Assembly: GCA_002269645.1 (NCBI GenBank) | Contig: NIVC01001045.1 | Coordinates: 117,032 to 181,031 of the forward strand | Direction: 5' to 3' | DNA from: Macrostomum lignano | Lineage: Eukaryota | DNA length: 64,000 nt | Shown here: piece by piece, positions 43,889 to 62,592 of the stretch | How the letters are laid out: each line of letters opens with the position of its first letter | Position numbering within the stretch: position 1 is the first letter of the stretch | Translations under genes and position numbers: made by a program | The notes under the pieces: generated by a model | Seen by the model: only the letters and a program-made list of their open reading frames with translations | Told to the model about the DNA's origin: nothing | The model's database searches: none

Positions 43889-44090
43889 AATGAATGTATA
43901 AAAAGTTAATATCTAATATATTATAGAATTTTGAAAATCAAATATTACTTTGAGTTGCTATAAGTAGTACTAATCAAAGCCTTTGTTTTCATGATTGTTG
44001 CAATACAAATTTTAAAAGATTTCAAATAAGTTGTTTTTAAACATTTGAACTGTATTTAACTGACAACTACCAGTGCTTACAAAACAGGGT

Positions 44091-45644
44091 ATGCCAGGCT
44101 GCTCAGCAGCACCCCTACCAGCCATCATGAGCTGCATCGAGCTGATTCGTCAGCGTAAACGTCGCCCAACACTGGAGCGAATTGCTAAAATCTTAAACTC
44201 TTCTCATTCCACTGGTCGCGTCCAAGAGGCTCTCAATTCGGCTGCAGAAGCCGGTCTAATCCTGCGATATGGCAAGCCAGACGATTATGCCTATGCTATC
44301 GTTCCAAAAAGTTGCAATGAAATTAACAACAAATATTCTAATTTGCTTCTTAACGATTCTACAAAGCTTGATGATGTTGGCGGGAATCCTGCCAGAGCTG
44401 CAACAGTCTGGCGTTGCGTTGATTCTCCCAGGCCGGATCTGGCGGCGGCAGACAATGAAGACACTCGCGACAATGACGATGGCAGCGATTCTTCGCATCG
44501 ATCGTTGGTGTTCGAAGATCTCACAGACTATGCGCCAACCCTTGGCGGCGTCGCGTTTAGACCGGTCACTCCACCATTGACGCCAACTTCTTCATCAAAG
44601 CTTCCTAATTCCCCGATGGCCGCGTCCTCTATTCGGAAGAGAACCGGCACTAAGCCGAAGTCGAAAAACAATACGGGAATCAGAAAATCGAATAATTCCC
44701 AAATTGCGAAGCCGAACTCTTATAAGAAGCGTACGAAACGACGCGATCAAGGCCTATACGATGGATTATCTCATCTGTATCACGCCGATTCTAAACGCGA
44801 TCGAAAGCGCAGCGGCTGTCAGCAACAGTCAGCAGCGTCGAATAATTATTGTCCAACAGTTGGCTTTGATGGCGAAGGAACCCTAGATAGCAGTCGCATG
44901 GCCGACGAAGATTCCTCTCTTGCTTGCGTTGAATCTCCATCCGTTTCCATGTCAAAACAGACTGTTGCAATTGCGGATTTGCCAGATCCAGTTCCGGCTG
45001 AGGATGTTGAACTGTTTCGCTTAGTTACCGCGCCAACTGCTGCCCAGCAACAGGTTGGAGTTGCCGAGTTGAGTAGCGGTTTAGCTCTACCACCTGCTGT
45101 TCAAATTGGTCAGCACCGTATCTCCTGCTGGTACTCGGCACCTTATCCGTCTGAGTACCTGCACCTGGCAGTGCTGCACCTGTGTCCTTTCTGTCTGCAC
45201 TACACTAAGTCTGCAAACGTATTAGCTAGACATCTGCTCAAAACTTGCCAATTACGCCATCCGCCTGGTAACGAAATTTATCGCAGAACCGATTTAAGCG
45301 TATTTGAAGTTGACGGCTCATCTGCTAAAGTCTATTGTCGGAATCTGTGCCTATTAGCCAAGCTGTTTCTCGACCATAAGACTTTGTATTTCGACGTTGA
45401 ACCGTTTCTATTCTACGTGCTGTGCCAACGTCGCCAAGACGGCTGGTATCTGTTGGGCTATTTTTCTAAAGAGAAGCGATCCGCTCAGCGTTACAATTTG
45501 TCTTGCATCATGACTTTGCCTTGCTATCAGCGCAGAGGCTATGGCCGATTCCTAATTGACTTCTCCTATCTGCTGTCGCGTAGGGAACTGCTGCCCGGCA
45601 CGCCCGAGCGACCGCTGTCTGACTTGGGTCGCCTGACTTATCAG
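44091..45644 (+). CDS. KAT6: KAT6/MOZ/enok-like MYST histone acetyltransferase, exon 1
   Basis: N-terminal winged-helix ([16 protein letters not shown]), [10 protein letters not shown] motif, WYSAPYP, C2HC finger [48 protein letters not shown]; donor CAG|gtgagg. Confidence 0.88.
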
Positions 45645-45761
45645 GTGAGGCTTGGATACGAACGATTGGGAGTCTGTCTTTGCTGACTCGTACAGACATG
45701 TTGGTCCGGCGGTACGCTGGTTGCTGTCTGTGTGTCGTTTTGACCTCAGGTCCTTGGTTAT

Positions 45762-46715
45762 GTGTCTGTCGGTCTCGGCTGTCTGTGTCTGTCGGTCTTA
45801 AGTGTATCTGTCTGTCGGTCTTAAGTGTATCTATCTGTCGGTCTTAAGTGTATCTATCTGTCGGTCTTAAGTGTATCTGTCTGTCGGTCTTAAGTGTATC
45901 TATCTGTCGGTCTTAAGTGTATCTATCTGTCGGTCTTAAGTGTATCTGTCTGTCGGTCTTAAGTGTATCTGTCTGTCGGTCTTAAGTGTATCTATCTGTC
46001 GGTCTTAAGTGTATCTATCTGTCGGTCTTAAGTGTATCTATCTGTCGGTCTTAAGTGTATCTGTCTGTCGGTCTTAAGTGTATCTATCTGTCGGTCTTAA
46101 GTGTATCTATCTGTCGGTCTTAAGTGTATCTATCTGTCGGTCTTAAGTGTATCTGTCTGTCGGTCTTAAGTGTATCTGTCTGTCGGTCTTAAGTGTATCT
46201 GTCTGTCGGTCTTAAGTGTATCTATCTGTCGGTCTTAAGTGTATCTATCTGTCGGTCTTAAGTGTATCTATCTGTCGGTCTTAAGTGTATCTGTCTGTCG
46301 GTCTTAAGTGTATCTGTCTGTCGGTCTTAAGTGTATGTGTCTGTCGGTCTTAAGTGTATCTATCTGTCGGTCTTAAGTGTATCTGTCTGTCGGTCTCAGC
46401 TATCTGTGTCTGTCGGTCTGAGCTATCTGTGTCTGTCGGTCTCAGCTATCTGTGTCTGTCGGTCTCAGCTATCTGTGTCTGTCGGTCTCAGCTATCTGTG
46501 TCTGCCGGTCTCAGCTATCTGTGTCTGTCGGTCTCAGCTATCTGTCTGTCGGTCTCAGCTATCTGTCTGTCGGTCTCAGCTGTATGTGTCTGTCGGTCTT
46601 AATCTTAAGTGTATCTGTCTGTCGGTCTCGGCTGTCTGTGTCTGTCGGTCTTAAGTGTATCTGTCTGTCGGTCTCAGCTATCTGTCTGTCGCTCTTAGCT
46701 ATCTGTGTCTGTCTG
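45762..46715. repeat. 23-bp intronic minisatellite (GTCGGTCTTAAGTGTATCTATCT), grading into a CTCAGCTATCT variant
   Basis: About 40 copies inside the MYST intron. Confidence 0.95.
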
Positions 46716-46942
46716 TCTGTGTGTTTGTTTATCTGTCCTTCCTTGCTGTCTTTGTCTGTCAGTCTCAGCTTGTTTATTTTTTGTTTATCTTTGTTGTCCG
46801 TCCTTATGGCTGCCTGTCTGTCTGTCGATCTAGGCTGTGTTTGTATCTCAGTATCTTATTAAACTCTATGAATTTTTTTTTTAATTTTGAAGCCTTTACT
46901 ACAAAAGCATCAATTGTCCTTCCCCTACAAAAACATTGCAAG

Positions 46943-47326
46943 GCCTATTGGACAGACGCAGTGCTAGACTGGCTATCAGCAAAAGTTTTCGGCTCAACTG
47001 ACAAACTGGAATCGGCCTCGTTCATCAGCTGTACAGACTTGAGTAGCATAGAATTCTCAATCTCTGAAATGGCTTATAGCACTGGCATTGAAGCTGACGA
47101 TCTGGCTGGCACTCTGCAGCGTCTGGAATTACTGCAGCTGTCATCTGCTCAGCCGCTGCAGCAGCGTCAACAGCTTCAAGTAGACGCCAGTAAACTACGA
47201 CGCCGCTTGCTAGATCGTCGTCGAGTTCGTCAGGGCAGCGGCGGTGCCGGGGCCGGACGACGTACAGTTGAATTGGCCAAATTGGACGAAGAAGCCCTGC
47301 GTTGGGCACCTGTAGTGATTCGCTGA
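46943..47326 (+). CDS. KAT6: KAT6-like MYST acetyltransferase, exon 2 (end of MYST domain, stop)
   Basis: ttgcaag|GCC TAT TGG, phase 0; AYWTDAVLDWL...SISEMAYSTGIEADDLAGTLQRLELL matches the MYST C-terminal helices. Confidence 0.85.
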   Translation, partial: AYWTDAVLDWLSAKVFGSTDKLESASFISCTDLSSIEFSISEMAYSTGIEADDLAGTLQRLELLQLSSAQPLQQRQQLQVDASKLRRRLLDRRRVRQGSGGAGAGRRTVELAKLDEEALRWAPVVIR

Positions 47327-48197
47327 TTTAATTAGTGATTTAATGTGTAAACATGCAGTTTATTATGCTACTGTTGCTGGGGGGGGGGGTCAGGCTCTCC
47401 AGTCAATTCAGTTGAAAACGTTATTCTGACTTTTCAAATAATCAAATAACCGTGACGGTCACTAGCGCATCACGTGAGTTGCTGAATCGTAAGAGGCGCA
47501 ATAAGTCCAAGAGTCGTTGTGTTAGCGCTTAGCGCTTGGCCCCAGAGTCGCAGACAATAAAATGCCTCAAATAGACTCTTAGGCGAATTGTACCGTGACA
47601 TCTCTTCATTTTAGAGTAACTTCTTTCCTATTTTACCTGTGTTACCTGCAAGAACCTGTTTACCTAAGCCTGTTCAACCCTATCTATTAATGAAATTACC
47701 TAAATAAAACAAAATTAATTTGTCCTTAAAGAAAACTAATCAGTAAACAATAAGAACTGTTTCATGTGTCGATTTTTTCAAATTGCATTTTCGTCTTATA
47801 TCTCAATCAAAATAGTGTATTTTAATCTGATTATTTTTCAACTGTTTATTAGTGCTGTATGTTATTATCCAGCTAACTCGCTTATTTGCTAATAACACTT
47901 ATCGCCTGTGCTATTTGTTCATATTAGTTGCTTCAAATACTACTTTCAGCTTACTCTTTATATTCTGCATTCGTTTTGTTGTTTTGCTTTTAAAAATGTG
48001 TGCTAAGTTCGATCAACAATATTCTTGCTGTCCGCACCGTGCGCTAAGTTTTACCGCTTTTTTGCTTTTTTGCTACTTTTTCTTACGAATATAAGTAGTC
48101 TATAGTTGAAACTATGGAAGATAATTGAAGTAGAAGAAACGCCACACTTAAAAATTCTAACATCTAAATTTATATGTTTTGATGTTAAAGTTTTGAA

Positions 48198-49140
48198 GCG
48201 GAGTTTCGTTTGTCTGGCTGACCTCTCTCCTTACTGCTTTCTCTTTGGTTGAGCTAGATTGGGCCTGCTCCTAGGCTGCGTTTCGTCCGTCTGACTGAAC
48301 TCTCTCCTTACTGCTTTCTCTTTGGTTGAGCTAGATTGGGCCTGCTCCTAGGCTGCGTTTCGTCCGTCTGACTGAACTCTCTCCTTACTGCTTTCTCTTT
48401 GGTTGAGCTAGATTGGGCCTGCTCCTAGGCTGCGTTTCGTCCGTCTGACTGAACTCTCTCCTTACTGCTTTCTCTTTGGTTGAGCTAGATTGGGCCTGCT
48501 CCTAGGCTGCGTTTCGTCCGTCTGACTGAACTCTCTCCTTACTGCTCTCATTGGCTGAGCTAGATTGGGCCTGCTCCTAGGCAGCGTTTCGTCCGTCTGA
48601 CTAAACTCTCTCCTTACTGCTCTCATTGGCTGAGCTAGATTGGGCCTGCTCCTAGGATGCGTTTCGTCCGTCTGACTAAACTCTCTCCTTACTGCTCTCA
48701 TTGGCTGAGCTAGATTGGGCCTGCTCCTAGGATGCGTTTCGTCCGTCTGACTGAACTCTCTCCTTACTGCTCTCTCATTGGCTGAGCTAGATTGGGCCTG
48801 CTCCTAGGATGCGTTTCGTCCGTCTGACTGAACTCTCTCCTTACTGCTCTCTCATTGGCTGAGCTAGATTGGGCCTGCCCCCCCCCCCCTAGGCTGAGTT
48901 TCGTCCAGCTAAGTTGACCTTTCTCCTTACTCTTACTGCTCTCATTGGCTGAGCTAGATTGGGCCTGCCCCCTAGGCGGAGTTTCCTCCGTCTCATTTTA
49001 GCCTCTCTCCTTACTGCTTTCTCATTGGCTGAGCTATATTAGGCCTGCCCCCCCCCTACACTAACGTTCGTCCGGCTAACTTTGACTCTCTCCCCTTTTG
49101 ATCTCTCATTAGCTGAGATACTCAGACCTGCCCCTTAGAC
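48198..49140. repeat. 75-77-bp tandem repeat
   Basis: CTCTCTCCTTACTGC..GAGCTAGATTGGGCCTGCTCCTAGG..GTTTCGTCCGTCTGACTGAA, about 12 copies, degenerating at the 3' end. Confidence 0.93.
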
Positions 49141-49999
49141 TGAGTTGCTTCTGTCTTGCGTTCACTTGTGTAACATCAAGTTAAATGCTTAATCATTCTT
49201 TTGCTCCTGAGGCAACAAGCACCGAGGTTAGTGCAAGAACAGGCCGTTTCTTCTATTTCAGTTGTCAAAAACATGGTTAGAATACGCTTGGTATCTATAT
49301 GCTATTTAACCTATAATACTAACTCTTTGTACTCTTTTTTGAAACTGTACCTTTATCTATAAAACAAAGAGTTCAAGCCGGTCTTTCTTTTATTGTGTTA
49401 TTTTGGCGTCCCGAAATGTTAATTTAAGTCTTTTTCGAGAACAAACCGCTGCTCAGTTCCGGTGCGACCTTTTATATATTTACTTATTTTATGATTTAAA
49501 TTGACAACACACCGTATCATTTAGTGCAATTTGAGTTTGTTCTTTTATTAAAACAAATATCAATAATTTACGGTGTTACTATGCGCGTATTATAACTGGA
49601 ATTTCAGCTCATTTTGTTTAGTGCAGTTTATACAGTTGTCCTTTTGTACAGCGCATTGTTTAGCTGTTATATACCTATAATTCAGTTTTTGCCTTTCTAT
49701 TTTAATCTATTAGTATCCGTCTATTTTTAACAGTTTTAATTTGTTTAATATAATCGTATAAAATTGCTGTCTATTTGTTGGTCTTTTTAAAAGAAAACTT
49801 TTCTTACTCGTATCAATGTGTCTTTTTTAAACAAAAGCTCACTTGTTTAATAATAAACAAAGCAGGGTGGTGTATTATTTAAACTTAATTGTTGTTTATT
49901 TATTTTTACACAATAAAATTTTTATAGATTCAAACAATCAGATAGCTAGCTTATCTCACTTTGCTTGGCTTCGACCATAGACATTTGATTAGGTTTAAT

Positions 50000-50329
50000 A
50001 GTTAGAGGCAGTGTATGCATCCTGGCCATGGATGAAGGCGCACTATGTCTCCATTGTCACACAACCAGCGAGAGGCATTACTGCACATTCCGCCGACTCC
50101 AAAGCAGGCACACATAGCTGAGTATACAGCGGCCCTCACTTTACTTACCGTTAGGCATGTAAACTTCACTGTGCCTTGTGGGTTGGCCCACAAGCTGGGC
50201 GTTAAATGCACGAGCAGAGCCAAGCCAAGATTCCAATTTAGCCCTTTAAATTAATGTGACAGCTCTTGGAATCGAGCCTGGGCCGCTAGTACATCAGAGC
50301 GCCTCGCTAGACCACTAGGCTACGGCCCC
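50000..50329 (-). mobile_element. tRNA-derived SINE-like element
   Basis: Minus strand reads GGGGCCGTAGCCTAGTGGT (A box)...GGCTCGATTCC (B box, 50278-50268), followed by a non-tRNA body; 3' end uncertain. Confidence 0.55.
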
Positions 50330-50496
50330 TTGGTGGTCACAAAACGTAGACGGTCCATCTAGCTGAGCTGCAATAGAAATTTTAAGGTTAGGCGTTGCAC
50401 TGTCTCAGCAATGCAGTAAAAATTTAGCCTAATTGAACCGAAGTGAAACGAAGTGAACAAAGGATTACATCCCCCTTTTCTCCACAATCCAATTGC

Positions 50497-51381
50497 ATGA
50501 AGGTTCCACGCGGTGCCGAATTTCAATACTGGCCGCGCTACATCAGCCGGCTGCTGCGTATGCAGGTGAAATACTGCGGCGAATTATTAGGCTACAAATT
50601 GGCTGTGCCTCAGCCTCAGTCTATGTACTTCGGCTTGCCAGACTCGAAGCCTCATCAGCAGAAAGATTTAGTTAATCGGCGACTGTTTGGCGCCACAGAT
50701 AAGGGCTATCCTAATTGGTCATTTAGCGAGCAGTATCCGTGGGATCAGGCTAACACCATAGCCGAGTATGTGTACCCGGATGTCACCTGGACTGTGCAGT
50801 ACCCAGACGGTAGACGCCGGGCCCAGCGAATCAGTGGTCTGACCTGGCAGGATCAGACCATCTATCCGGGTGACATCGTGGTAGTAACGGATCCTAAGCA
50901 TCCTGATTGTGTGAACGCTTCCGCTGTAGCTTCCGGCGAGATGCGCTCCGGTCGCGTGATCTATATTCAACGAATGCAACGAGCCGCCATAGTTTCTGGC
51001 CTGAATATTGATTATGTTCAGCAGGGTAATTCGCCAAACCAGCTGGGGACTGTTGCCAATCTAATCAGTCTGGACAGTCTGTCTCTGCTAGACCCGAAAA
51101 CTCAACAGCCTACTAAAGCCGAATGGCGTCAAAATGAAGCTGGCGAACTTGTTCGAGTCGCTTTGGCTACGGGGCGTATTATACCCCTACCGTTGGAGTG
51201 GGAGACTCTTGACGACCAGACTAGGCCTAGTCAGTACCTGCTGAATGAGCAGCACGATACGCCTGAAGCCGACCTGCTCAACGCCACCTATCGGCCTAGT
51301 AGCAGAACATTTGAAGAAGAGATTGACGCAGAAATGAACTTGCCAGAGCCTGGGCCAAGGCGGGAAACATTTTGGTATTAA
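50497..51381 (+). CDS. MRPL24: Mitochondrial ribosomal protein uL24m (intronless, 294 aa)
   Basis: KOW-like IYPGDIVVV, L24 segment LSLLDPKTQQPTKAEWRQNEAGELVRVALATGRIIPLP, C-terminal TFEEEI..MNL.E..RRETFWY typical of metazoan MRPL24. Confidence 0.9.
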   Translation: MKVPRGAEFQYWPRYISRLLRMQVKYCGELLGYKLAVPQPQSMYFGLPDSKPHQQKDLVNRRLFGATDKGYPNWSFSEQYPWDQANTIAEYVYPDVTWTVQYPDGRRRAQRISGLTWQDQTIYPGDIVVVTDPKHPDCVNASAVASGEMRSGRVIYIQRMQRAAIVSGLNIDYVQQGNSPNQLGTVANLISLDSLSLLDPKTQQPTKAEWRQNEAGELVRVALATGRIIPLPLEWETLDDQTRPSQYLLNEQHDTPEADLLNATYRPSSRTFEEEIDAEMNLPEPGPRRETFWY

Positions 51382-52175
51382 TTAGGGCTCAAGTGTTTGA
51401 ATACACCACAGATATTAAAATAACTGGATGGGCCACCCAGGCATGTATACTTGGTAAAGCAGCTTTCTACTTGCAGTTCAGTAGCAAAGAAGACTACGTA
51501 AGCTAATAAAGGCAGCTAAAATGACTTTGATAAGTTTAGAAGCCCAAGCTTGCAGGCGCGTAAACAACTTGCTAATTGGTTCAGCAATAATGTACATTAG
51601 CCAGCTGTCCACTGAAATGTACATGGCAGCTTTAGGCTGGAATTCCGAGAAAGGCAATAAAAATTGGGGCGGGGCGGGGGGGGTAGTGTAGAAAGAGCGC
51701 GATTGGAGGGTTTTGGAGGGGGGGGGGGTTAAGAGCCACAATATATTATTGAGCCTTGGATTTAAAATACATTAAAATGCTTCTGTTTAACTTACTACTG
51801 AACTGAAAGTAGCTTACACGCAAATGTGCTGAGTGGACCATAAAGTTATTCTAGCATCTGTAGAATGCGCTAAATTCAAAAACTTCACACCTGTTTTTAG
51901 TAGCTTAAAAAACAACAAAAACTAAAGTTAATAATAAAAGTGTTAAAGCATTTCTCAATTATGATAACAATAAAAAATATTTAGTTATTGTTTTTCTGTA
52001 ACGTTTTTATGAACTTTCTTTGCATTATTTTTTCTATTCTCATTTTCATCCTTATTTATAGAGTCGTTAAATGGCGGTTATGACATGGTGAAGCATCTTA
52101 TGATTTGAGTATACGGCATTATTATTTATAATGCAAGTATATACAAGTATCTTTTCTTGTTTATTTCCGTTCCAG

Positions 52176-53048
52176 AATCGCCGACCAAGAACCAGATCGC
52201 GCGAGTTGGCTGAGGCTTCAGCCTCCTCGTCAATCTCTACATCTTCATCTACAGTTGTCGTCCACTCGACATCGTCTGCATCGAATTCTTCATCCAGCTT
52301 TCTTGGTCTGCTATGGACAGAAGAAATACAACTGCGTCGCGCTCTGTTGCGTAGTATGCGCGATTCGAGTTCTAATGGCACTTCCGGTGTGACTTCCGGT
52401 TCTGATAGCGGCACTTCCGGTTCCAGTTGTACCACTTCCGGCGTGACTTCCGGTCCAAATTGCGGCACTTCCGGTTCCAATAGTATCACTTTCGGTGTGA
52501 CATCCGGTCCCAATCGCGACACTTCCGGTTCCAGTAGTATCACTTCCGGTGTGACTTCCGGTCCCAATTGCGGCACTTCTGGTTTCAGTAGTAACTTCAG
52601 TCAACGAAAGCGAACAATGTCGGAATCGAATTTTTCTATCACTGCAATCGACAATAAAAAGTCTAACCAAAAAAGTCGAATCTCATTTCCATCGTCAACT
52701 TACGGAATTTCCGGCTTTGCGTCCGTTAGACGTCTTAGCGAGGCTGCTCAGATTGAGCCGCAGCTTTGCGTAGATCCTGGCACCGGAAATCCGGTTCGTA
52801 CTGGCGATTTCTTAGAGTTCCTCTGCTTTCACGGCGCCAACCCGTCTGTGCCGATGCCACAGAGGTTGCGTTTTTTCGCCCTGCCGCCCAGCCAGCGGAT
52901 TCTACCGATCCAAAAGAGGAAACAGGGAATCCCTCGAGTTTCTAATGAGAACACTAATCCGAGAGGCGGGCTGTTGGAGGCTAAAAAACGCCGAAAATCT
53001 TGCGACACAATGGGAACGGTCAACGGCCAACTCTGTGGAAACGGTTAG
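52176..53048 (+). CDS. JARID2 N-terminus-like protein (UIM plus PRC2-binding motif, no ARID/JmjC)
   Basis: Acceptor ttccag|AAT in frame; GLLWTEEIQLRRALLRSMRD (52305-52364) and PVRTGDFLEFLCFHG (52791-52835) align with recalled human JARID2 [20 protein letters not shown] and KPKTEDFLTFLCLRG; start uncertain (ATG 52085-52087 spliced, or ATG 52131). Confidence 0.72.
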   Translation, partial: NRRPRTRSRELAEASASSSISTSSSTVVVHSTSSASNSSSSFLGLLWTEEIQLRRALLRSMRDSSSNGTSGVTSGSDSGTSGSSCTTSGVTSGPNCGTSGSNSITFGVTSGPNRDTSGSSSITSGVTSGPNCGTSGFSSNFSQRKRTMSESNFSITAIDNKKSNQKSRISFPSSTYGISGFASVRRLSEAAQIEPQLCVDPGTGNPVRTGDFLEFLCFHGANPSVPMPQRLRFFALPPSQRILPIQKRKQGIPRVSNENTNPRGGLLEAKKRRKSCDTMGTVNGQLCGNG

Positions 53049-53110
53049 TCCAAGATCGCTAGCAAGTAAATCGTGTTTTTTCCTGGAAACAGCTTAGATA
53101 CTGTATCTTC

Positions 53111-53358
53111 CGCTGGGAAAAATTCAGCGACGACAGGTTGATGACGAGAAGTTGACGACTAGTCACCCTGTCGTCGCCATTGGCAGTCGACCAATCAGAG
53201 GCCGATAGAAAGCAGGCAGCGAAGCAGATTTGGAAGCGCGCATTTGAACGATACTACTGAGTTGAACAAATCATACTTATTTTAGCAAATCAATAGTTAA
53301 TCGACAGGGCTGTCGTTGCTTGTCGTCAGAGTGTCGTCGCTGCAATTTTTTCCCAGCG
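53111..53358. mobile_element. 248-bp MITE with 3-bp TSD (CACTA/EnSpm-like)
   Basis: TIRs CGCTGGGAAAAATT.CAGCGACGAC / GTCGTCGCTGCAATTTTTTCCCAGCG; TTC on both flanks. Confidence 0.7.
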
Positions 53359-56255
53359 TTCCAAGCATTGGCAGTTTGGCTTTTACTTTAAGTAGTCAAT
53401 TGTTTCCTCATAGCGTTACAAACGTCAATGGCATTTTATTAATAACAATTAATTTTATTATCCACGTGATTTTTTCTTTTTTTCATTGCTTTTTTAAATT
53501 TTGCGTAGCAACTAAACGCGGTCTTGTATTATATTAATTTTGCTTTTATCTACATTTGTTGCGTATTATTATATACGAAATTGCATTTACGTGCAATTCG
53601 TGTGCTTTTTTATAATTGGTTAATAAACAATTCAATAAAAATGCTTGACTAAGTGTGGTTTTATTTAACCAGTAGTACATTTTCTCTTTATGTTTTTTAC
53701 CTTAATTATCAATTAGAATTTTAAGTAAGTGTTTCTTGTTAAAAAAATAGACTAGCAACCTAGCGTTCCCACGCGCGAGGTTAGTGTTGGCTAAACAGCA
53801 AAATGCATAACTCATTAGCAGCATACTTGTAGTACCATATTTAGGATTTTTAATAACTTAGTAGAAGTAAGTAAATTCTATACAAGAAATTACTGAATTT
53901 AAACTCATGCATTTCTTTCGTGCATGCTTAAGTATCTGAATACCCCGTGTGGTGCTCTAATTTTATTGATAACTAGAGTGGAGAAGGTAAACTGCAATTC
54001 GCGATGTGACGACCAATAAATGCCACTGAGGTGGTGATCCATCATCAACCTCTGAGGTCACGTGCAGTGATGATGCTTTACTCGGACAATAACTTGCGTT
54101 GTTTATTTGTAATTGTCAGCTCGTAAATACGCTTGGTAAGGGTTGATTTTACACTTCATCAATAACCTGAGATTATTTACAAGAAGATTCTTTAACTTGG
54201 CATCGTAAATTTATCCAAAAAACTCCAATCAGACGCTGACCATTCTAAGTAGAGTCAATGCGTATTTTTCTAGCTGAAAATTAATTCGAAAAGTAAAGAA
54301 TAAACGGTTGTTTTATTTAGATTCCGTCGTATATATATACAGTACATCAATGTAAGAAACAATTTGTAGCGCTATTTAGCTTCTTCATAGCTCTTTAATA
54401 TAGTCGCTTATCACTCACTCCGAAATTGAGCAATATTTTTTTGATTGTTATTTTCAATTTTTCGCCAAAACTATAGATGTTTACTGTGTGTCTATTTTTG
54501 TTATTCTAATAGAAGCGCCATTACGCAAATCCATCGATGTGCTTATAATGTAGTGTAGCTGATTGTTTTGATCAAGTTTAATTTAAAAAAATAATAATTT
54601 CAATATTTACTCCAGATTCTACTAATTGATATGGTTTGTCAATTAATGTGTTGCTTATTTTTTGTTGAAATAATTGCCCCTAATTATTAATCCTTCTAAT
54701 TGTAGAAGCGATTTTTAAGTTCTCTCTCGGATGAAAGCAAACCAACCAGTGACATTTGCTGTCATTTTTCTGTATCTCTCCTGTCCTTGCGTGTTTGTTC
54801 GTCATTCGCGCTATTAAATCCCATATTTTATTTAGTACGTATGCTCGTATGTATTATTTATTATTTAAGCCTAGAAATTTCGGTTAAAAGAATCTTAATG
54901 GGCCAATATTCCTATATATTATGTATCAATAGTTGTTATGGCTCATTTAGTTCTAATAAAAACATAACCTAATGTATCCATTAATAATACGTTTATTGTG
55001 TGGTCGCGGTTTCTTATGAGGATAAATTGCCTATATTATTCGATTCCGCTTATTGTAATGTTTAATTTACTTTGTAACTTTCACCACGTTATTTTATGTC
55101 ACTATCTGGTACACGAAACTTCAATTAAGATTTTAAATCATTTTAATTTAGTTTTTTTAACTTGCAAACGAAAGGTCATTTAAGGTCAAACAAATCAGCT
55201 GATTCTTGATGCCGCACGAATAATTATGGAAACTTGCTTATAAATTTCAGTGTAATATTTCGGAGTATCTTACGTTCACTGCCAGCTTTTTATTCTTATC
55301 GTTTTGGCAATCTAGTTATTGACGCTTCAATTATATTGTTTATTAATTAGAGTTTGCTGTTTCACTTTATTGTTATCGATATTTTTATTAAATCGTTTTA
55401 AATGTAATTTTTTAACTGCAACAGTTGCTGCACCTTATTCTAGAGTGTTCAATTCTCTTGAACTACATTCGTAGGGATGTAAGTACAAGATATTTTTAAA
55501 TTACCAGTTGCAGCGGTCTCTTGGATTAAAAGTTCAGTAACTAATAGTTTTCTTAGTTGTAGTAATGAGTTAACCTAATCTCTGCGAAAATTAATTGTCT
55601 GAAGTATTTTTGAGTATGTTGGATAGAAAACATTAACTAAAACTTTTTTCAGTAGTTTCTTGAATAAAGTTTCGGTAACTAATTGTCTAAATCGTTTTTT
55701 TGTGTTTTAAAATATATAAGCAAAAATAGTAGATTTGGTATTATTTTTTGAAGCTCTGATTAGTGTGTTAGATTTCTTGTTTATTTCCATTTTAAACTTA
55801 TAGCGGTCCATTAAATTCCTACTTTTTATTAACGCAGAAACGGTTATTGATTTTTGTAAGAATTACACCCACAGGCTCTAGTTCATGTTTTCCAAGTTCT
55901 CTACTTTTGTTTTCTTGTCTCCTTACTCGACAATTAGCTATCATTTAACTACATTCTACGACTATCTGTAAACAGCAATTATAAATTACTATTTTCAACT
56001 TTATTTTGAATCACCTGTAAGTGATATTTTAACAGGCAATATTTAGTCCTTGAAAATTATTTCAAGTCTCTTACAGAGTGTGCTTTTCTTAATAATTTTT
56101 TGTTCTTAATTATTATTCAAAATTAAATATAACTAATAACCTTGATTTCCTTAAATCTATGTTTTCCGTCGAAGGTGGCCAACAAAAGTTCAGCAGAGAG
56201 ATAAAGCCTTCGATAAATTAAGCTGTCGCAATTCGAAGACCGAGACAGCATCATT

Positions 56256-59200
56256 ATGTCTTCAACGTCTTCCACTGCACAGGACGATATGGAAGCAAAG
56301 TTTCGCCAATCTGAAGACAAGATTAACAAGCTCAAAGCTATGGTAATCAAAGAGAAGAAGGCTAACGCCGAATTAAAGTCCAGTTTTGACAAGTGCCAGA
56401 CTGAGCGAGACCAGCTGACTGACCAGCTAGCCAGACTGTCGGCTACAATCGGAGACCTGCAAGTTGATGCCGACGCTTTCGATGATGCTAAGCGTCAATT
56501 AGACAGCCTAAAGCATGAGAATGCTCAACTGAAGGATCAGGTTGTGAGTTTGACAAAGCAAGTTGATGATGCTCAGTCTAGTACCGATTGTCGCGTTGAA
56601 GATGTTAAGCGAGAAAACTCTACGCTTAAAGATGAACTAGCCGCCGTAAAACAACAAATTGACGCACTGAAAGCTAATGACACCAATTTGAATCAAGAAA
56701 ATGCTCAACTTATTAAAGAAATTGCAAGTTTAAAATCGCAGTTAGTCTCAAGAAGAGAATAATTCACTTTTGGATCAAATCAATGAGTTGAAATCCGAGG
56801 TTGGGCGGCTGGAGACTGTCCAACACGAAAAGGAAGAACTTAGTAAAGAAATTGCCAATCTGAAAGCAAGCGCTGATGCTGCTGCTTCTGAGTTGAACTC
56901 TATTCGGCAGGAGAGAGACGATGCACTCTCTCAAATTAATCGAATGAAGAGCCAACTAGAGACTGCAGTGACAATGAAGAACAAGTTTCTAATTTGAGAG
57001 CTGAAAATCTGGAACTTCGCAACGAGTTTTCGCAGCTTCAGGCTCAAATTGAATCAACTAAAAGCACTGCTGACGCTGTCAGTTTCGAGAGAGACGAAGC
57101 ATTGAAAGAGGTTGGTCGTATGCGCACTGAGCTTGAAGCATCAACTGATGCGGCTAGTGAATTGGCCAGCATTCGAGAGTCTAATTCCCAGTTGACAGAT
57201 GAAATAACTCGATTGAAATCTGAGATCGAAGCCTTGAATGCTGAAAATGAAGCTCTTAAGCATGCAAAGACCGACTCTGATGCTATTAACGACAGTCTCA
57301 AAAGTCAAAATGACCAGCTCATTAATGAGTTGGCTGGCTTAAAAGCAGAAATAGACGTCGCGAATGCAAGTGTTGACTCGGAAAAGCTTAAACGAGTGAA
57401 CTAACAGAAGAAATTGCCAAAATGAACTCAGAACTTGAGACAGTGAAAACCATGGGAAATAGTGAGAACACTGAGCTAGTTAGTGAGGTTTCGCGCTTAA
57501 AAGTCGAATTGGAATCAGCATTTGCCACTACAGAGTCTGTCAAGCTTGAGAATGTAGAACTTCTTAAGCAGGTTGACAGCATGAAAGCACAATTAGAAGC
57601 CGAATGTGCAAGTCACGATCAGTTGGAAAGCGTTCGAAATGAGAACGTTAACCTCACTGAAGAAGTCTCTCGTCTTCAGACTCTGATTAAAACTGCTAGC
57701 AGTGATGCTGAGTGTTTCAAGCTCAAGAACAATGAGCTTGCCGAAGAAATTCAAGAATTGAAGATAGAGCTTGAATCAGCTAATTCCAGTAACGTTCAAC
57801 TGAATGAATTGCAACGTGAGAGGGATGCGCTTAGCAATGAAGTTTCTCGATTAAAAGCGGAGCTTGAAGCCAACTCTAGCGCAGCTACCTTAGTTGAGGA
57901 CGATCGTGACGAGTTGAACGAGGAAGTAAAGAGGCTTAAGGCGAAACTTGTTGAAGTTTCTAATGCACATGAAATCGAACGGGATCAGTTAACAAGTGAA
58001 AATAATCGACTCAGTGAAGAAATTTCCAGGCTAAAAGATGAATCCAGCCAAGGTGATGACAATAAAATCAGTGGCCAAGTCGAGCCAACTGACAGTACGC
58101 CCGAAGTTTCAAGTATAAGACTCGAACTTGAAGAAGCCAACGCCGATCGAGACAGGTATGCCGCCGAAGTTGACAAACTGCTCGAATTAAATATGAAATT
58201 GTATGACGACAATGCTAAGTTGGCCAAGTCAAAAGAAGAATTGGAGGCTTTATTAGGTCCACGACCGGAGGGTGAAGGAGAAGAGAGCACATCAGCTGAT
58301 GCGGCATCTTTGAATCCCAGCTCGACTACTGACCCTGAAGCAAGTGTCGAGTTATCTAACCTGCAAGAGGAAATTATTCGATTAAGAGAAGAAAATGCGA
58401 TGCTGCTGTCGAAGAAAGAACAGTCTGAGACTTTAGAGAAAGATCCCGATGAAAATTTTCAAGATATCATTAATGAAAGAGAGGAGCTATTAGACCAGGT
58501 CTCCTGCTTGGAGAAGCAGATAAGATCGCTGGAACGAAGGTTAGATGCGTCTAGCGATATGCTTGCCGAGTCCGATCGGCGACAAGAGACCCTCGAAGCT
58601 GAGAACACGCAACTTAAAGAACTATTAGCCACATTTCAGTCTGACATTGCCGTTCTAAAGGAGGATGTAAAAGGCAGTGAGCCACGTTTGCTGAAATCAT
58701 TAATAGATATATTGGAAAACCTCAGTCAGGTTGCCAGCCAGAGACAGACGATTGACTTTCAAGAACTTCTTTCGCCTTTATCAGATGAAGCTCTTAGTCC
58801 AGACAATATCCAGCAACTTAAATCAGTCCTGGAACCTCTGGCTAATAAGCTGTCTGGTGCCGAGTTGTTAAAGGATGGTGTTGATCGATTAACTAACAAG
58901 TGCAACCACCTTGAAGAGGAATTGCAGTCGCGTGTTGAACAATACGACGAATTGGTTCGCCGACGTGATAAGTTAGCTGAAGAGGTGGACACATTGCAAC
59001 AAGCTGTAGAAAGCCAAGTAAGCATTGCTCGCGACGTTGAAATGGAGAAAAGTAACCTGCAAAGTGAGCTCCGCGAATGGCAGAACCGCGCCGAGGAGAA
59101 AGAATCCTTCCTACAGGAAGAGTTGCGCGATCTTCGACGCTGTGTCAGCACGAAGGAAGAACAGTTGGAACGATTGCAGATTACTCTGCGCCACGAGCTG

Positions 59201-60138
59201 GCGGCAAGAGATAGCGAAATTCAGCGCCTTAACGACGAGTTTGTGAACTATTCCAATCGTGCCGGAGATACGGATGAAGCTCAGTCACGAGTTTCCGCTT
59301 TGGAAGCTGAAAATGCCAGCTTGCGTGAAGCTCACGATGCTCTACATCAACGCGAAGTGGCCAGCGCTGACAAATTAGACAAGATGAAGCAGCTAATTGT
59401 AAAATTAAAACGAGAATCTGGTCCGGCAAAGGAGCAGCTTGAGCAGGCGCGCTCCGAGTCTGGCCAGTTAAAAGCTCGTCTGACGGCGCTAGAAAAAGAG
59501 CTGAGCGTTGCAAAATGCAACTTGATCAGCAGATGTCCGACCGAACAGCTGCCGAGGAAGAATTAAAGAAAGTGAAACGCGAACTTGAAGAATCTACTAG
59601 AGCTCACGAACTCGAAGTTAATCTATTGCAGGAAAGGTTGGAAGCGGCGCAGACCGGCGTCAGCCAATCAAAGATGCTTGATCTTGAACTAGCCGAGCTG
59701 GAGCGAAACGTTGACGTTTATAAAAATCTTCTCGACGATAAGGAAGCTGTATTGGCTGAAAAGGTTAATGAGTTAGCAACCATGACGGAGTCTTGTCGCA
59801 GCTTGGAAACTCAGTTACAAGAAGCTCAGTCACAACGAGCTGCATCCGAGGAGCGAGTAGGCAAGTTAAAGCAGATGCTGGTGAAAAGCAAGAAAGAGTT
59901 GGCTGAAGTGCAGAAGTCGATGCAAGAAACGGAGGAACGCTCACGCGACTCAATTAGAGAGCGTGACTGTCTGACTTCTGAAATTGACGACCTAAAATTG
60001 CAGCTTTCGTCTGCGTTAGCTCTGAAGGTTTCCACAGACCAAGAGTTAACTAATACTAAGAATCGGTTTCAGGCGCGCTTGCAGGCTACGGAAGAGAAGC
60101 TTAACTCTGCTAGAGCTAAACTAGAGCAAGCTGAGCAG
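56256..60138 (+). CDS. GCC2: GRIP-domain golgin (GCC2/GCC185-like), exon 1, long coiled coil with 4 apparent frameshifts
   Basis: Consecutive E/K/L-rich heptad ORFs chain together by single frame changes at ~56745, ~56967, ~57391 and ~59514; includes DKMKQLIVKLKRE and KLKQMLVKSKKELAE; donor CAG|gtgcgt. Confidence 0.78.
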
Positions 60139-60383
60139 GTGCGTGTCTATCTTGTGTCTTGGTTTTGACTTTTGAGTTAGTAAGAACTAAAAGTTAGAAA
60201 AGTTAGTTAGAACTAAAACATAATATTCACTAGGTACTTAGGTAAGAATGTTTTTCGCACTGGATCAGACAGGTTGCAGTGTCCGGAATCGTAGGGGTCA
60301 AGACATGTGGGAAGTCTCCCATGGCTCGCTTCATTAAACTCCAAAAAGTTACAGCCCCCAATGCTCCCCGACCTTCATCGCAG

Positions 60384-60791
60384 GCCCGTCAAACTCTTGC
60401 CGAGGACTTCGACGCCTACAAAACGAAAGTGTCGGCCGCATGGCGCGCCGAAAAGCGCCAGCCAATCGCAGCCAAGACGTCGGCTGCTGCCAACGTGTCG
60501 ACAAAGTCGGCCACTGGTGGCGAGTCCGACGCGGCTGATTCCGAGCTGCTCCGTCAACGACTCGAACAGGCCGTTGCCAGTCTCAAGGAGCAGCTGGCCG
60601 CTTCGCAGGCCGCCACCGCAGACGCTCAAGACGAGCGGGACGCGGTTGCGCGCGAACTCGATGCTCAACGACGGCGTGGCGAAACGCGCGAAGCCGAGGC
60701 TGCGGCACGCGAGGCGCGGCTTCAGGCCCGGCTGGACCAGCTGGCTGAGGCTGAAGCGCGGGCGGGCGAGCGGGCTCGGCTGGAGATGCAG
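60384..60791 (+). CDS. GCC2: GCC2-like exon 2
   Basis: cgcag|GCC CGT..., EDFDAYKTKV motif; donor CAG|gtgagc, phase 0. Confidence 0.78.
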
Positions 60792-60811
60792 GTGAGCACC
60801 CTCCTAGATCT

Positions 60812-61435
60812 TCAGTTGCTGGGCCAGCCTCCCAGTGTGTCAGTTGCTGGGCCAGCCTCCCAGAGTGTCAGTTGCTGGGCCAGCCTCCCAGAGTGTCAGT
60901 TGCTGGGCCAGCCTCCCAGAGTGTCAGTTGCTGGGCCAGCCTCCCAGAGTGTCAGTTGCTGGGCCAGCCTCCCAGAGTGTCAGTTGCTGGGCCAGCCTCC
61001 CAGAGTGTCAGTTGCTGGGCCAGCCTCCCAGAGTGTCAGTTGCTGGGCCAGCCTCCCAGAGTGTCAGTTGCTGGGCCAGCCTCCCAGATCTTCAGTTGCT
61101 GGGCCAGCCTCCCAGAGTGTCAGTTGCTGGGCCAGCCTCCCAGAGTTCAGTTGCTGGGCCAGCCTCCCAGAGTGTCAGTTGCTGGGCCAGCCTCCCAGAG
61201 TGTCAGTTGCTGGGCCAGCCTCCCAGAGTGTCAGTTGCTGGGCCAGCCTCCCAGAGTGTCAGTTGCTGGGCCAGCCTCCCAGAGTGTCAGTTGCTGGGCC
61301 AGCCTCCCAGAGTGTCAGTTGCTGGGCCAGCCTCCCAGAGTGTCAGTTGCTGGGCCAGCCTCCCAGAGTGTCAGTTGCTGGGCCAGCCTCCCAGAGTGTC
61401 AGTTGCTGGGCCAGCCTCTTGATCTCCAGTTGCTG
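60812..61435. repeat. 28-bp intronic minisatellite (GTGTCAGTTGCTGGGCCAGCCTCCCAGA)
   Basis: About 22 copies; explains the periodic tails of ORFs 60279, 60835 and 60872. Confidence 0.95.
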
Positions 61436-61671
61436 CGCTACCACCGCTGGAGTCCTCATCGGTGCAGAGTGAGATTGGATTGTCCGTATAGTGAAAATAG
61501 GGACACTGAAGTGACATAAAATATCATCCTTGGTTGCTGAGCAGTCGCTATTGTCTCAGATCCTCAGATCTTCCCAGCTGCTAATCTACTATTACTACGT
61601 GGCAAATCGTGGTGCTCCTATTAGTAATTATCAAACCAAGTAAGCCCGGCTCCGCTCTTCCCCATCCGCAG

Positions 61672-62141: not shown

Positions 62142-62174
62142 GTATGTTGTTTATTGACCATAGTATTGTCATGC

Positions 62175-62592
62175 TAGTGTCATAGTGTCATGACTCATAG
62201 TGTGCTAGTGTCATAGTGTCATGACTCATAGTGTGCTAGTGTCATAGTGGCATGACTCGTAGTGTGCTAGTGTCATAGTGGCATGACTCGTAGTGTGCTA
62301 GTGTCATAGTGTACGAGTACTAGGGTCAAAGTGTCATGGTGTGCTAGTGTCACACTGTACTGGTGTCATAGTGCACTAGTGTCACACTGCACTAGTGTCA
62401 CACTGCACTAGTGTCACACTGCACCAGTGTCACACTGCACTAGTGTCACACTACACTAGTGTCACACTGCACTAGTGTCACACTGCACTAGTGTCACACT
62501 GCACTAGTGTCACACTGCACTAGTGTCACACTGCACTAGTGTCACACTGCACTAGTGTCACACTGCACCAGTGTCATACTGCACTAGTGTCA
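62175..62592. repeat. Intronic ~31-bp then 16-bp (CACTAGTGTCACACTG) tandem repeats
   Basis: Directly visible; the 16-mer contains the palindrome AGTGT-C-ACACT. Confidence 0.92.

What the first reader, a model, noticed from the sequence alone, without database searches (positions are those of the whole stretch)
52085..53048. Stand-alone mini-JARID2: H2AK119ub-reading UIM plus PRC2-binding helix without ARID/JmjC
Seen in the sequence: a ~290-aa ORF with GLLWTEEIQLRRALLRSMRD and PVRTGDFLEFLCFHG..P..L.FF, a possible K116-like SQRK, a basic C-terminus and a stop at 53048. The following 3.2 kb up to the golgin is AT-rich, with no recognisable JmjN/ARID/JmjC exon. Established: these JARID2 segments are the ubiquitin-interacting motif that binds H2AK119ub1 and the SUZ12-binding region (human sequences recalled from memory). 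Inference: this is a split or truncated JARID2 that keeps only the PRC1-to-PRC2 bridging module, i.e. a potentially undescribed Polycomb accessory protein.
Basis: partly seen in the sequence, partly recalled or inferred. Interest (0 to 1): 0.8.

Follow-up and report, generated by a model that had tools for sequence, protein, structure and literature searches.

The report
Stand-alone mini-JARID2 gene in a flatworm
A small, mostly disordered protein of the flatworm Macrostomum lignano carries, in the right order, the short motifs by which the Polycomb cofactor JARID2 reads ubiquitinated histone H2A and docks onto PRC2, but lacks the rest of JARID2, so it looks like a natural "minimal JARID2" that nobody has described.

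Summary
Window 52176-53048 (+) is a single-exon coding sequence of 290 codons in Macrostomum lignano (window = NIVC01001045.1:117032-181031). GenBank calls it a hypothetical protein.

An independent profile of JARID2 N-termini (four vertebrates and a limpet) aligns collinearly with the flatworm protein across the UIM and the SUZ12-binding segment. hhalign gives 95.5%, E 1.4e-8, against control scores of 20.5 or less. An ortholog from a second species has saturated synonymous sites. It conserves little beyond the N-terminal RPRTRS, the UIM, the DFLxFLC...RLRFFALPPSQR block and a KRRR patch, and it stops at the same place.

Three RNA-seq-based gene models end at this stop. The window holds no JmjN, ARID or JmjC on either strand.

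New here:
- The exon starts at a TTCCAG trans-splice acceptor in phase with the ATG that ends the spliced leader.
- It is gene 3 of a polycistronic unit, downstream of an mRpL24-like gene.

Unresolved:
- The K116 equivalent is ambiguous.
- The basic segment that binds the acidic patch is missing.
- A donor-like G|GTTAGT overlaps the stop.
- I could not test whether a separate ARID-JmjC JARID2 gene exists in this genome.

Function is inferred, not shown. Verdict: new variant of a known kind, of moderate to high interest.

The parts
52170..52175 (+). Trans-splice acceptor TTCCAG; the exon starts at 52176 in phase 0
   Evidence: Matches the M. lignano SL acceptor motif [T/C]TNCAG (PMC8629364). 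The GenBank product P0006 starts exactly at 52176. The same acceptor is present in copy L001, and an acceptor lies at the equivalent place in L002.
52176..53048 (+). Single-exon CDS of 290 codons plus TAG (mini-JARID2). The initiator ATG is inferred to come from the spliced leader (...TTGCATG)
   Evidence: ORF. Gene models. The SL ends in ATG, and the flatworm SL AUG is used as initiator (PMC12582326 citing Cheng 2006). The first genomic in-frame ATG after the acceptor lies inside the conserved UIM. L002 has an in-frame stop upstream of its acceptor.
52179..52199 (+). N-terminal basic motif RRPRTRS (aa 2-8), the counterpart of the JARID2 N-terminal ERPKRN
   Evidence: R-P is invariant in the alignment of human, window and L002. 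Patella has RRPKRN. 7 of 8 residues are conserved in L002 at dN/dS 0.08.
52299..52367 (+). Ubiquitin-interacting motif FLGLLWTEEIQLRRALLRSMRDS (aa 42-64), a predicted helix
   Evidence: hhalign matches aa 43-74 to JARID2 20-51 at 95.4%. 19 of 24 residues are identical in L002 at pS 0.67 and pN 0.16. AF2 predicts a helix at 43-63. It fits the UIM key positions: hydrophobic L53, A56, S60, acidic D63.
52379..52593 (+). In-frame 54-nt tandem repeat (4 copies) encoding a Ser/Thr/Gly-rich linker between the UIM and the RK motif
   Evidence: TRF. It is 21 aa shorter in PAA72514.1 and absent from L002.
52599..52613 (+). Candidate K116-like site SQRKR (K145); ambiguous
   Evidence: R-K is kept in the paralog (SRRK) and in L002 (GNRK). 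hhalign instead places human QRKFAQ opposite NKKSNQ (K161/K162). MAFFT puts human RKRPRL opposite NQKSRI.
52773..52898 (+). SUZ12-binding (TR) segment homolog DPGTGNPVRTGDFLEFLCFHGANPSVPMPQRLRFFALPPSQR (aa 200-241)
   Evidence: BLASTP against human 153-170 gives E 6e-4. It corresponds to JARID2 139-169, the peptide of PDB 9c8u_E. It is the most conserved block in L002. It has the highest pLDDT and predicted helices at 209-219 and 229-235.
52983..52997 (+). Basic patch KKRRK (aa 270-274), a possible nuclear localisation signal
   Evidence: Conserved as KRRR in L002. The NLS function is inference only.
53044..53049 (+). Donor-like GTTAGT overlapping the stop codon TAG (53046-53048)
   Evidence: Sequence. 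L002 has G|GTTAAT in the same phase. It does not fit the M. lignano donor motif GT[G/A]AG, and no gene model uses it.
50503..51381 (+). Upstream cistron of the same transcriptional unit (Mlig007089 g2/g5): mitochondrial ribosomal protein L24-like
   Evidence: Pfam ribosomal_L24. GenBank names g2 and g3 lie on one contig and g5 and g6 on another. The naming and cutting of units at SL sites is described in PMC5730564.
53622..53639 (+). First two AATAAA hexamers after the stop (53622, 53634): candidate poly(A) signals
   Evidence: Pattern scan. Their use is not shown.

Best explanation
This is a real, expressed Macrostomum lignano gene. It encodes an intrinsically disordered protein of about 291 aa that is homologous to the N-terminal PRC2-interacting region of JARID2 only. 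It has no JmjN, ARID, JmjC or zinc-finger part.

Expression. The gene is the third cistron of a polycistronic unit (after an mRpL24-like gene). Its mRNA is made by spliced-leader trans-splicing at 52175/52176. The leader's terminal AUG supplies the start codon, giving M-NRRPRTRS..., which mirrors the MSKERPKRN start of human JARID2.

Inferred mechanism, by analogy with human JARID2 1-450, which suffices in vitro.
- The DFLEFLC...RLRFF segment docks on SUZ12 and makes the protein a PRC2.2-type accessory subunit.
- The UIM helix binds the ubiquitin of H2AK119ub1 laid down by PRC1. This holds or recruits PRC2 on PRC1-marked nucleosomes.
- An R-K site in the linker may be methylated and stimulate PRC2 through EED.

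Shown: sequence homology, motif-restricted purifying selection, gene models, and absence of the C-terminal domains from the locus. Inferred: the SL-donated start, binding to SUZ12 and to ubiquitin, and any activation.
For: Organism and gene models.
- Searches identify the organism and give three single-exon gene models that end at the TAG. The annotation method is RNA-seq with trans-splice and poly(A) site mapping (PMC5730564).
- The g2/g3 and g5/g6 names show that this gene shares a transcriptional unit with the mRpL24-like gene.

Start of the protein.
- The acceptor TTCCAG fits YTNCAG, and the SL ends in ATG. The flatworm SL AUG serves as initiator.
- No usable genomic ATG lies upstream of the conserved UIM in either species.

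Homology to JARID2.
- BLASTP gives E 6e-4.
- hhalign gives 95.5%, E 1.4e-8, collinear from the UIM to the TR, with clean controls.
- The independent HMM gives E 1.8e-4 for the ortholog, and the window ORF is the top-ranked of the 536 ORFs of the window itself (second only to the added ortholog). No shuffle reaches either score.

Constraint. The ortholog L002 is 44% identical. Its conservation is confined to the N-terminal motif, UIM, TR and KRRR, at saturated dS.

Structure. AF2 predicts disorder, with helices only at the UIM and the TR.

Precedent. JARID2 aa 24-41 is the UIM helix, and JARID2 1-450 suffices for stimulation on H2AK119ub1 nucleosomes. JARID2 139-169 alone is a crystallised or cryo-EM peptide (9c8u_E).
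Against: - The window ORF alone scores weakly against the JARID2 HMM (E 3.3, or 0.33 without the repeat).
- Neither phmmer against the PDB nor phmmer against 1.84 billion proteins retrieves JARID2.
- The invariant AQRKFAQ of JARID2 is not conserved, so the K116 equivalent is ambiguous.
- The basic segment that sits on the acidic patch (human aa 42-57) is replaced by a Ser-rich sequence.
- The two M. lignano copies differ by 10 nonsynonymous and 2 synonymous changes, so there is no sign of constraint at that short time scale. All changes lie outside the conserved motif positions.
- A donor-like GT overlaps the stop in both species.
- No transcript reads, no protein data and no search for M. lignano SUZ12, EED or RING1 were available.
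Confidence: 0.55

Rival explanations
1. It is a JARID2-derived module that acts as a competitor or decoy rather than an activator. It lacks the ARID domain, the nucleosome/DNA-binding parts and a clear K116. It would then occupy the JARID2/EPOP site on SUZ12, or cap H2AK119ub1, and so tune or antagonise a canonical PRC2.2.
For: The TR and the UIM are conserved, but the AQRKFAQ activation motif and the basic segment that contacts the acidic patch are not. Planarians are reported to have a gene called Jarid2, so a canonical copy may coexist in flatworms. Competition between JARID2 and EPOP for SUZ12 is established knowledge (Chen et al. 2018) and was not tested here.
Against: No canonical JARID2 of M. 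lignano was seen in any search. An R-K dipeptide is kept in all copies and in the ortholog. Human JARID2 1-450, which also lacks ARID/JmjC, activates rather than inhibits.
Confidence: 0.15
2. It is the first coding exon of a longer, conventional JARID2 gene. The G|GTTAGT at the stop would be a splice donor, and the ARID/JmjC exons would lie beyond the golgin, past the ends of the available contigs.
For: The donor-like site sits in the same phase in two species. The window and L001 contigs both end about 1 kb after the golgin. In vertebrates and in Patella the module belongs to full-length JARID2.
Against: Three RNA-seq-guided models and one older prediction all stop at the TAG, and the collection records only the longest product per gene. 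GTTAG does not fit the species' donor motif GT[G/A]AG. The intron would exceed 11 kb and contain a 7-kb gene on the same strand, whereas the mean intron is 1.1-1.4 kb. The 3' flank of L002 is AT-rich with no further ORF.
Confidence: 0.12
3. It is a flatworm-specific disordered protein unrelated to JARID2. It would carry a generic UIM and a hydrophobic helix that resemble JARID2 by chance or by convergence.
For: The matches are short. The window ORF alone is not significant at proteome scale. Large-scale single-sequence searches do not reach JARID2. UIMs occur in many protein families.
Against: Three or four motifs occur in the same order and at similar positions, including the very N-terminus. 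The profile-profile score is far above the controls. The ortholog reaches E 1.8e-4 with two collinear domains. The exhaustive search with the TR-containing C-terminal 154 aa returned, besides flatworm relatives, only two spurious weak hits. The profile search in which the DFLxFLC...F block sat alongside the human JARID2 N-terminus returned, apart from the flatworm relatives, only JARID2 fragments and unnamed short fragments closely similar to human JARID2.
Confidence: 0.12
4. It is a decaying remnant of a duplicated JARID2 5' end. It would be transcribed only because it sits in a polycistronic unit, and it would have no function.
For: There is no genomic start codon. pN/pS between the M. lignano copies is about 1.7 (10 vs 2 changes). 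The internal repeat is unstable.
Against: The reading frame is intact in at least three genomic copies and in a second species whose synonymous sites are saturated. Motif islands have pN 0.06-0.26 against pS 0.5-1.0. The missing ATG is explained by the spliced leader.
Confidence: 0.05

Closest known systems
N-terminal region of vertebrate JARID2 (human aa 1-~180; used as JARID2 1-450 in PDB 6WKR and 139-169 in 9C8U)
   Same: The motifs come in the same order: the N-terminal R-P-[KR] motif right after the initiator Met, the UIM helix (human 24-41), a linker with an R-K site, then the DFLxFLCxxG...P...[YF]F segment that binds SUZ12. Both are predicted to be disordered outside the motifs.
   Different: - It is a complete protein, not the N-terminus of a protein of 1246 aa or more. 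It has no JmjN, ARID, JmjC or C5HC2.
- AQRKFAQ (K116) is not conserved.
- The basic segment 42-57 that binds the acidic patch is absent.
- The UIM is more canonical (Ala at the UIM Ala position, where human has Val).
- There is a lineage-specific 18-aa tandem repeat in the linker.
- The vertebrate intron right after FLCLRG (inferred from truncated fish predictions) is absent.
Patella vulgata 'protein Jumonji isoform X2' (P0052, 319 aa, NCBI prediction)
   Same: It is a lophotrochozoan product that consists only of the JARID2 N-terminal module (RRPKRN, UIM LSKKEEKELKKALYASLQE, AQRKFAQ, TEDFLTFLCLRG) without ARID/JmjC.
   Different: It is a predicted alternative isoform of a gene that also has a longer product. 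Its name says 'isoform X2', and it is not on record as the longest product. It keeps the canonical K116 motif, and its expression evidence is unknown. The flatworm product is the only product of its gene.
EPOP and PALI1/2: small or disordered PRC2 accessory factors that use short linear motifs (established knowledge, not tested here)
   Same: These accessory proteins lack catalytic domains and act through a SUZ12-docking or EED-binding peptide. EPOP competes with the JARID2 TR for the same SUZ12 surface, and PALI1 mimics K116me.
   Different: There is no sequence relationship to them. They are vertebrate-specific, define PRC2.1 rather than PRC2.2, and have no UIM.
Delta-N JARID2 isoform of mammals (established knowledge, not tested here)
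   Same: It shows that the N-terminal PRC2-binding module and the ARID/JmjC body of JARID2 can exist and act separately.
   Different: It is the converse fragment: it lacks the N-terminal module and keeps ARID/JmjC.

Membership tests
JARID2 (Jumonji/ARID domain-containing protein 2) | JmjN, ARID, JmjC and C5HC2 zinc-finger domains | tested here: not met
   Pfam finds no family in the ORF at E<=10. tblastn and phmmer with human JARID2 550-1246 against the whole window, both strands, give a best E of 0.89. The ortholog has none either.
JARID2 (Jumonji/ARID domain-containing protein 2) | N-terminal ubiquitin-interacting motif (human aa 24-41) | tested here: met
   hhalign matches aa 43-74 to 20-51 at 95.4%. 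The motif is conserved in L002 at dN/dS of about 0.1. It is a predicted helix at 43-63.
JARID2 (Jumonji/ARID domain-containing protein 2) | SUZ12-binding TR segment (human aa ~139-169, KTEDFLTFLCLRG) | tested here: met
   BLASTP gives 10/19 identities, E 6e-4. It is HMM domain 2 in L002. It lies inside the collinear hhalign alignment. This is a sequence match only; binding was not tested.
JARID2 (Jumonji/ARID domain-containing protein 2) | Methylatable K116 in the AQRKFAQ context, which binds EED | tested here: inconclusive
   AQRKFAQ is invariant in vertebrates and Patella but absent here. The candidates are SQRK (K145; SRRK in the paralog, GNRK in L002) and NKKS (K161/162). Different aligners choose different ones.
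JARID2 (Jumonji/ARID domain-containing protein 2) | Basic segment after the UIM that contacts the H2A-H2B acidic patch (human aa 42-57) | tested here: not met
   The UIM is followed by SSSNGTSG... in the window and SQASSSSCSS in L002, with no Lys/Arg cluster.
JARID2 (Jumonji/ARID domain-containing protein 2) | Physical association with PRC2 and with H2AK119ub1 nucleosomes | not testable with these tools
   This needs co-IP or pull-down experiments, or at least complex structure prediction, which was not available.
UIM (Pfam PF02809 type ubiquitin-interacting motif) | Consensus acidic run, hydrophobic residue, x-x-Ala-x-x-x-Ser-x-x-acidic | tested here: inconclusive
   By inspection E49 E50, L53, A56, S60 and D63 fit the consensus (recalled from Hofmann and Falquet 2001). 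hmmscan against Pfam reported no UIM hit at E<=10.
SL trans-spliced downstream gene of a flatworm operon | Acceptor with the YTNCAG motif at the 5' end of the mRNA, same transcriptional unit as the upstream gene, and no genomic start codon needed because the SL ends in AUG | tested here: met
   TTCCAG lies at 52170-52175, and the annotated product starts at 52176. The g2/g3 naming puts the gene in one transcriptional unit that is cut at SL sites. The SL sequence ends in ATG. The SL-containing reads themselves were not examined.

The most novel reading that the evidence does not exclude
In macrostomid flatworms JARID2 has been reduced, or split, to its PRC1-to-PRC2 bridging module. A disordered protein of about 290 aa, encoded in an operon with its start codon supplied by the spliced leader, would then be the only JARID2-type subunit of PRC2. 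That would show that the UIM plus the SUZ12-docking peptide is the evolutionarily sufficient core of JARID2 function and that ARID/JmjC is dispensable.
Probability: 0.3. Interest if true: 0.75.

Novelty: new variant of a known kind. Interest (0 to 1): 0.55.

Why it matters
JARID2 is a large protein, and the in vivo roles of its catalytically dead JmjC domain and of its ARID domain are still debated. Biochemistry and cryo-EM place PRC2 binding, allosteric activation and H2AK119ub1 reading in the first ~450 residues.

A species in which evolution has kept only that module as an independent gene would be a natural separation-of-function experiment. It would indicate which parts are indispensable: the UIM and the SUZ12-docking helix are kept, while the K116 context and the basic segment that contacts the acidic patch are not.

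M. lignano has transgenesis and RNAi, so the PRC1-to-PRC2 link could be tested in stem-cell-driven regeneration.

The locus is also a clear example of a conserved chromatin regulator hidden as a 'hypothetical protein, partial', because its start codon comes from the spliced leader and its homology lies in short linear motifs.

Tried and rejected
- Pfam on the ORF and on the ortholog found nothing relevant.
- phmmer of the ORF against PDB sequences gave no JARID2 hit, only noise.
- The first word-indexed protein search was swamped by the Ser/Thr/Gly repeat: 8000 candidates, one hit. The repeat-deleted query again returned only the paralog.
- Exhaustive phmmer of the C-terminal 154 aa against 1.84 billion representatives returned one true ortholog (P0003) and two spurious hits, a plant subtilase and a repeat protein matching 'DYLNFLC' and 'RLxFFLIPP'.
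- The profile search with human plus flatworm N-termini returned mostly truncated vertebrate predictions. It gave no full-length invertebrate JARID2 and no second M. lignano protein.
- Looking up the genomic context of the Patella short isoform failed because it is not on record.
- Comparing the paralogous copies to find conserved downstream exons was uninformative: the copies are 98% identical downstream.
- Literature and supplement searches for Mlig007089, for JARID2 in Platyhelminthes, planarians, Schistosoma or Macrostomum, and for SRR30276812 gave nothing relevant. The one exception is a planarian RNAi screen that lists a 'Jarid2'.
- Rfam found nothing in 49000-57000.
- I rejected the genomic ATG at 52131 as the start. 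It lies in the polypyrimidine tract upstream of the acceptor and would add a non-conserved hydrophobic peptide. The second species has an in-frame stop there instead.
Full report
**What is there**

The window is the last 64 kb of Macrostomum lignano contig NIVC01001045.1 (record 117032-181031).

Its first 15 codons are a polypyrimidine tract that ends in TTCCAG (52170-52175). The GenBank product for this locus (P0006, 290 aa) begins exactly at 52176 with NRRPRTRS... and ends at the TAG at 53046-53048.

- GLLWTEEIQLRRALLRSMRD, aa 44-63
- SQRK, aa 142-145
- PVRTGDFLEFLCFHG...RLRFF, aa 206-234
- KKRRK, aa 270-274
- a GTTAGT that overlaps the stop

The 3.2 kb that follow have 29-36% GC. A golgin/GRIP-domain gene occupies 56256-63048.

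**Is the JARID2 resemblance real?**

I first checked my recollection of human JARID2 against PDB chains. Residues 1-449 are identical to 6wkr_B, and 550-1246 match 7kso_F over their full length.

Single-sequence methods are weak here.
- Pfam finds nothing.
- phmmer against the PDB does not reach JARID2.
- An exhaustive phmmer of the C-terminal 154 aa against 1.84 billion representatives finds only flatworm relatives and two spurious hits.
- BLASTP against human JARID2 does align RTGDFLEFLCFHGANPSVP with KTEDFLTFLCLRGS-PALP at E 6e-4. That is the stretch solved as peptide 139-169 in 9c8u_E.

The decisive tests used an ortholog and profiles. A Logan contig from a second species (L002, SRR30276812) carries a 283-codon ORF with the same layout. 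It starts after an acceptor, is 44% identical, and stops at the same place.

I built a JARID2 N-terminal alignment containing no flatworm sequence: human, three fishes and the limpet Patella vulgata (A3).
- hhalign of the two flatworm sequences against it gives one collinear alignment, aa 40-241 vs 16-183. Probability is 95.5%, E 1.4e-8, score 60.0.
- A reversed template scores 18.2. Thirty column-shuffled templates or queries score at most 20.5.
- hmmsearch with the same independent HMM, scaled to a 60,000-protein proteome, gives E 1.8e-4 for the ortholog. It finds two ordered domains, UIM then TR.
- The window ORF ranks second overall, behind only the added ortholog, and first among the 536 ORFs of the window itself. 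It scores only E 3.3 (0.33 with the repeat removed) because its low-complexity linker is penalised.
- None of 20,000 shuffles of either protein reaches the observed score.

A further positional match lies at the very N-terminus. Human has M-SKERPKRN, Patella has RRPKRN, and the flatworms have NRRPRTRS and NRPRTRS.

I conclude that homology to the JARID2 N-terminal module is well supported, at about 0.85.

**Is it a functional coding sequence?**

Between the window and L002, synonymous sites are saturated (pS 0.5-1.0). Amino acids are conserved almost only in four islands:
- RPRTRS, 7 of 8 identical
- the UIM, 19 of 24
- DPGTG..DFLxFLC..G / P.RLRFFALPPSQR, 28 of 39
- LExKxRR

That pattern means purifying selection on short linear motifs in an otherwise free-running disordered protein. 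AlphaFold2 agrees: mean pLDDT is 42, with helices only at 43-63 (UIM), 209-219 and 229-235 (TR).

Between the near-identical genomic copies of M. lignano there are 10 nonsynonymous and 2 synonymous differences plus a 21-aa repeat indel. At that short scale there is no sign of constraint. None of the changes touches a conserved motif position.

**Is it stand-alone?**

The NIVC annotation is not ab initio. It comes from genome-guided RNA-seq assemblies that were cut into genes at mapped spliced-leader and poly(A) sites (PMC5730564).
- Three independent contigs carry single-exon models that end at this TAG: PAA72514.1 (Mlig007089g3), PAA49920.1 (g6) and the window's own.
- An older prediction (P0002) ends there too.
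- The collection records the longest product per gene, so no longer isoform is annotated.
- The ortholog stops at the homologous position.
- No JmjN, ARID or JmjC similarity exists anywhere in the 64 kb on either strand.
- No longer protein sharing this module exists in the large libraries.
- The same gene order (mRpL24-like, then this gene) on several contigs argues against misassembly.

One rival remains. Both species have a donor-like G|GTTA[GA]T in phase 1 at the stop, and both long contigs end about 1 kb beyond the golgin. That site does not fit the species' donor motif GT[G/A]AG. Using it would need an intron of more than 11 kb that encloses a same-strand gene. I give this rival about 0.12.

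The upstream mRpL24-like gene is Mlig007089g2/g5 and this gene is g3/g6. They therefore belong to one transcriptional unit that the annotators cut at trans-splice sites.

The M. lignano spliced leader is CGGTCTCTTACTGCGAAGACTCAATTTATTGCATG, and its acceptor motif is [T/C]TNCAG (PMC8629364). TTCCAG|AAT at 52175/52176 fits that motif and is in phase 0 with the leader's terminal ATG.

Flatworm leaders are known to donate this AUG as initiator (PMC12582326 citing Cheng et al. 2006). This explains three things:
- GenBank flags the proteins as 'partial'.
- The first genomic in-frame ATG after the acceptor lies inside the conserved UIM.
- L002 has an in-frame stop just upstream of its acceptor.

The neighbouring mRpL24-like model shows the same behaviour: the product starts right after an AG at 50501-50502. 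The SL-donated start is an inference, because I could not look at reads.

**Most likely mechanism**

In human PRC2.2, JARID2 aa 24-41 form a UIM helix on the ubiquitin of H2AK119ub1. Residues 42-57 sit on the acidic patch, and K116me3 binds EED. The 1-450 fragment without ARID/JmjC is enough for stimulation on ubiquitinated nucleosomes (Kasinath et al. preprint). The TR peptide docks on SUZ12 (established knowledge; the peptide is in PDB).

The flatworm protein keeps the UIM, in a more canonical form with Ala56 and Ser60, and it keeps the TR block. I therefore propose that it is a minimal PRC2.2-type accessory subunit that tethers PRC2 to PRC1-marked chromatin.

Two elements are not conserved.
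- The invariant AQRKFAQ is missing. R-K is kept as SQRK, SRRK or GNRK, but aligners disagree on the equivalent residue.
- The basic 42-57 segment has no counterpart.

Allosteric activation and acidic-patch contact are therefore uncertain. A competitor or decoy role is a serious rival, at about 0.15.

**Comparison with what is known**

By membership criteria it is not a JARID2 family member in the domain sense, because JmjN, ARID and JmjC were tested and are absent. It is a homolog of the JARID2 N-terminal module.

The nearest analogue I found is the NCBI-predicted 319-aa 'protein Jumonji isoform X2' of Patella vulgata. That is an N-terminal-only isoform of a gene that also has a long product.

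I found no paper describing a stand-alone form in any animal. The GenBank entries are unnamed. A planarian RNAi screen lists a 'Jarid2', so canonical JARID2 may exist in other flatworms.

**Verdict**

Function is inferred. It is a new variant of a known kind. I score interest at 0.55. It would rise to about 0.75 if this is the only JARID2-type factor in the species and it binds PRC2.

Noticed in passing
window 52379-52593: An in-frame 54-nt tandem repeat (4 copies, 86% matches) encodes the linker (GVTSGPNCGTSGSSSITS)n. Copy number differs between genomic copies (21 aa fewer in PAA72514.1), and the repeat is absent from the ortholog in L002. At the DNA level the unit contains repeated ACTTCCGG, an ETS-site-like core on the opposite strand. 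It also creates long antisense ORFs (52067-52576, 52311-52670).
   Followed up: partly
window 53118-53349: Imperfect 31-nt inverted repeats (77% complementary, 170 nt apart) lie 70 nt downstream of the stop codon, with a nested 15-nt hairpin. They look like a small MITE-like insertion in the presumed 3' UTR.
   Followed up: no
window 50490-50505: Just upstream of the mRpL24-like cistron the genome reads CAATTGCATGAAG|GTT. The 8 nt ATTGCATG are identical to the 3' end of the spliced leader. The annotated products of the three copies start at K or V on either side of the AG. So the 5' end of this gene is ambiguous between a genomic ATG and an SL-donated ATG.
   Followed up: partly
window 56256-63048: The golgin/GRIP-domain coiled-coil gene is annotated in this copy only as a 540-aa product (59515-62874). 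The 96%-identical copy on NIVC01001087.1 has a model of 1713 aa or more. The ORF is broken into several pieces here. It also contains a 28-nt tandem array of 21.7 copies (60812-61418) that is open in several frames.
   Followed up: no
window 44073-47326: A MYST-family histone acetyltransferase gene (zf-MYST, MOZ_SAS) has an N-terminal SAMD1-like winged-helix domain, so it is KAT6-like. It lies upstream on the same strand. It is another chromatin regulator and may be g1 of the same transcriptional unit.
   Followed up: partly
window 750-31950, 45759-49048: The first half of the window is dominated by many different satellite and minisatellite arrays with periods of 3-181 nt. They include strongly strand-skewed (GAGAGT)n and (TGTGTGTGATTC)n arrays. 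There are also interstitial telomere-like (TTAGGG)-containing 39-nt repeats at 13582-14548 and 15286-15458.
   Followed up: no
window 63064-64000 and the end of L001: The window ends exactly at the end of contig NIVC01001045.1. The paralogous contig NIVC01001087.1 ends about 1 kb earlier, just after the golgin. So both assemblies break at the same place, which suggests a repeat or a collapsed duplication downstream.
   Followed up: no
window 51670-51730: Long G-runs (GGGGCGGGGCGGGGGGGG ... GGGGGGGGGGG) lie in the 0.8-kb spacer between the mRpL24-like cistron and the mini-JARID2 acceptor.
   Followed up: no
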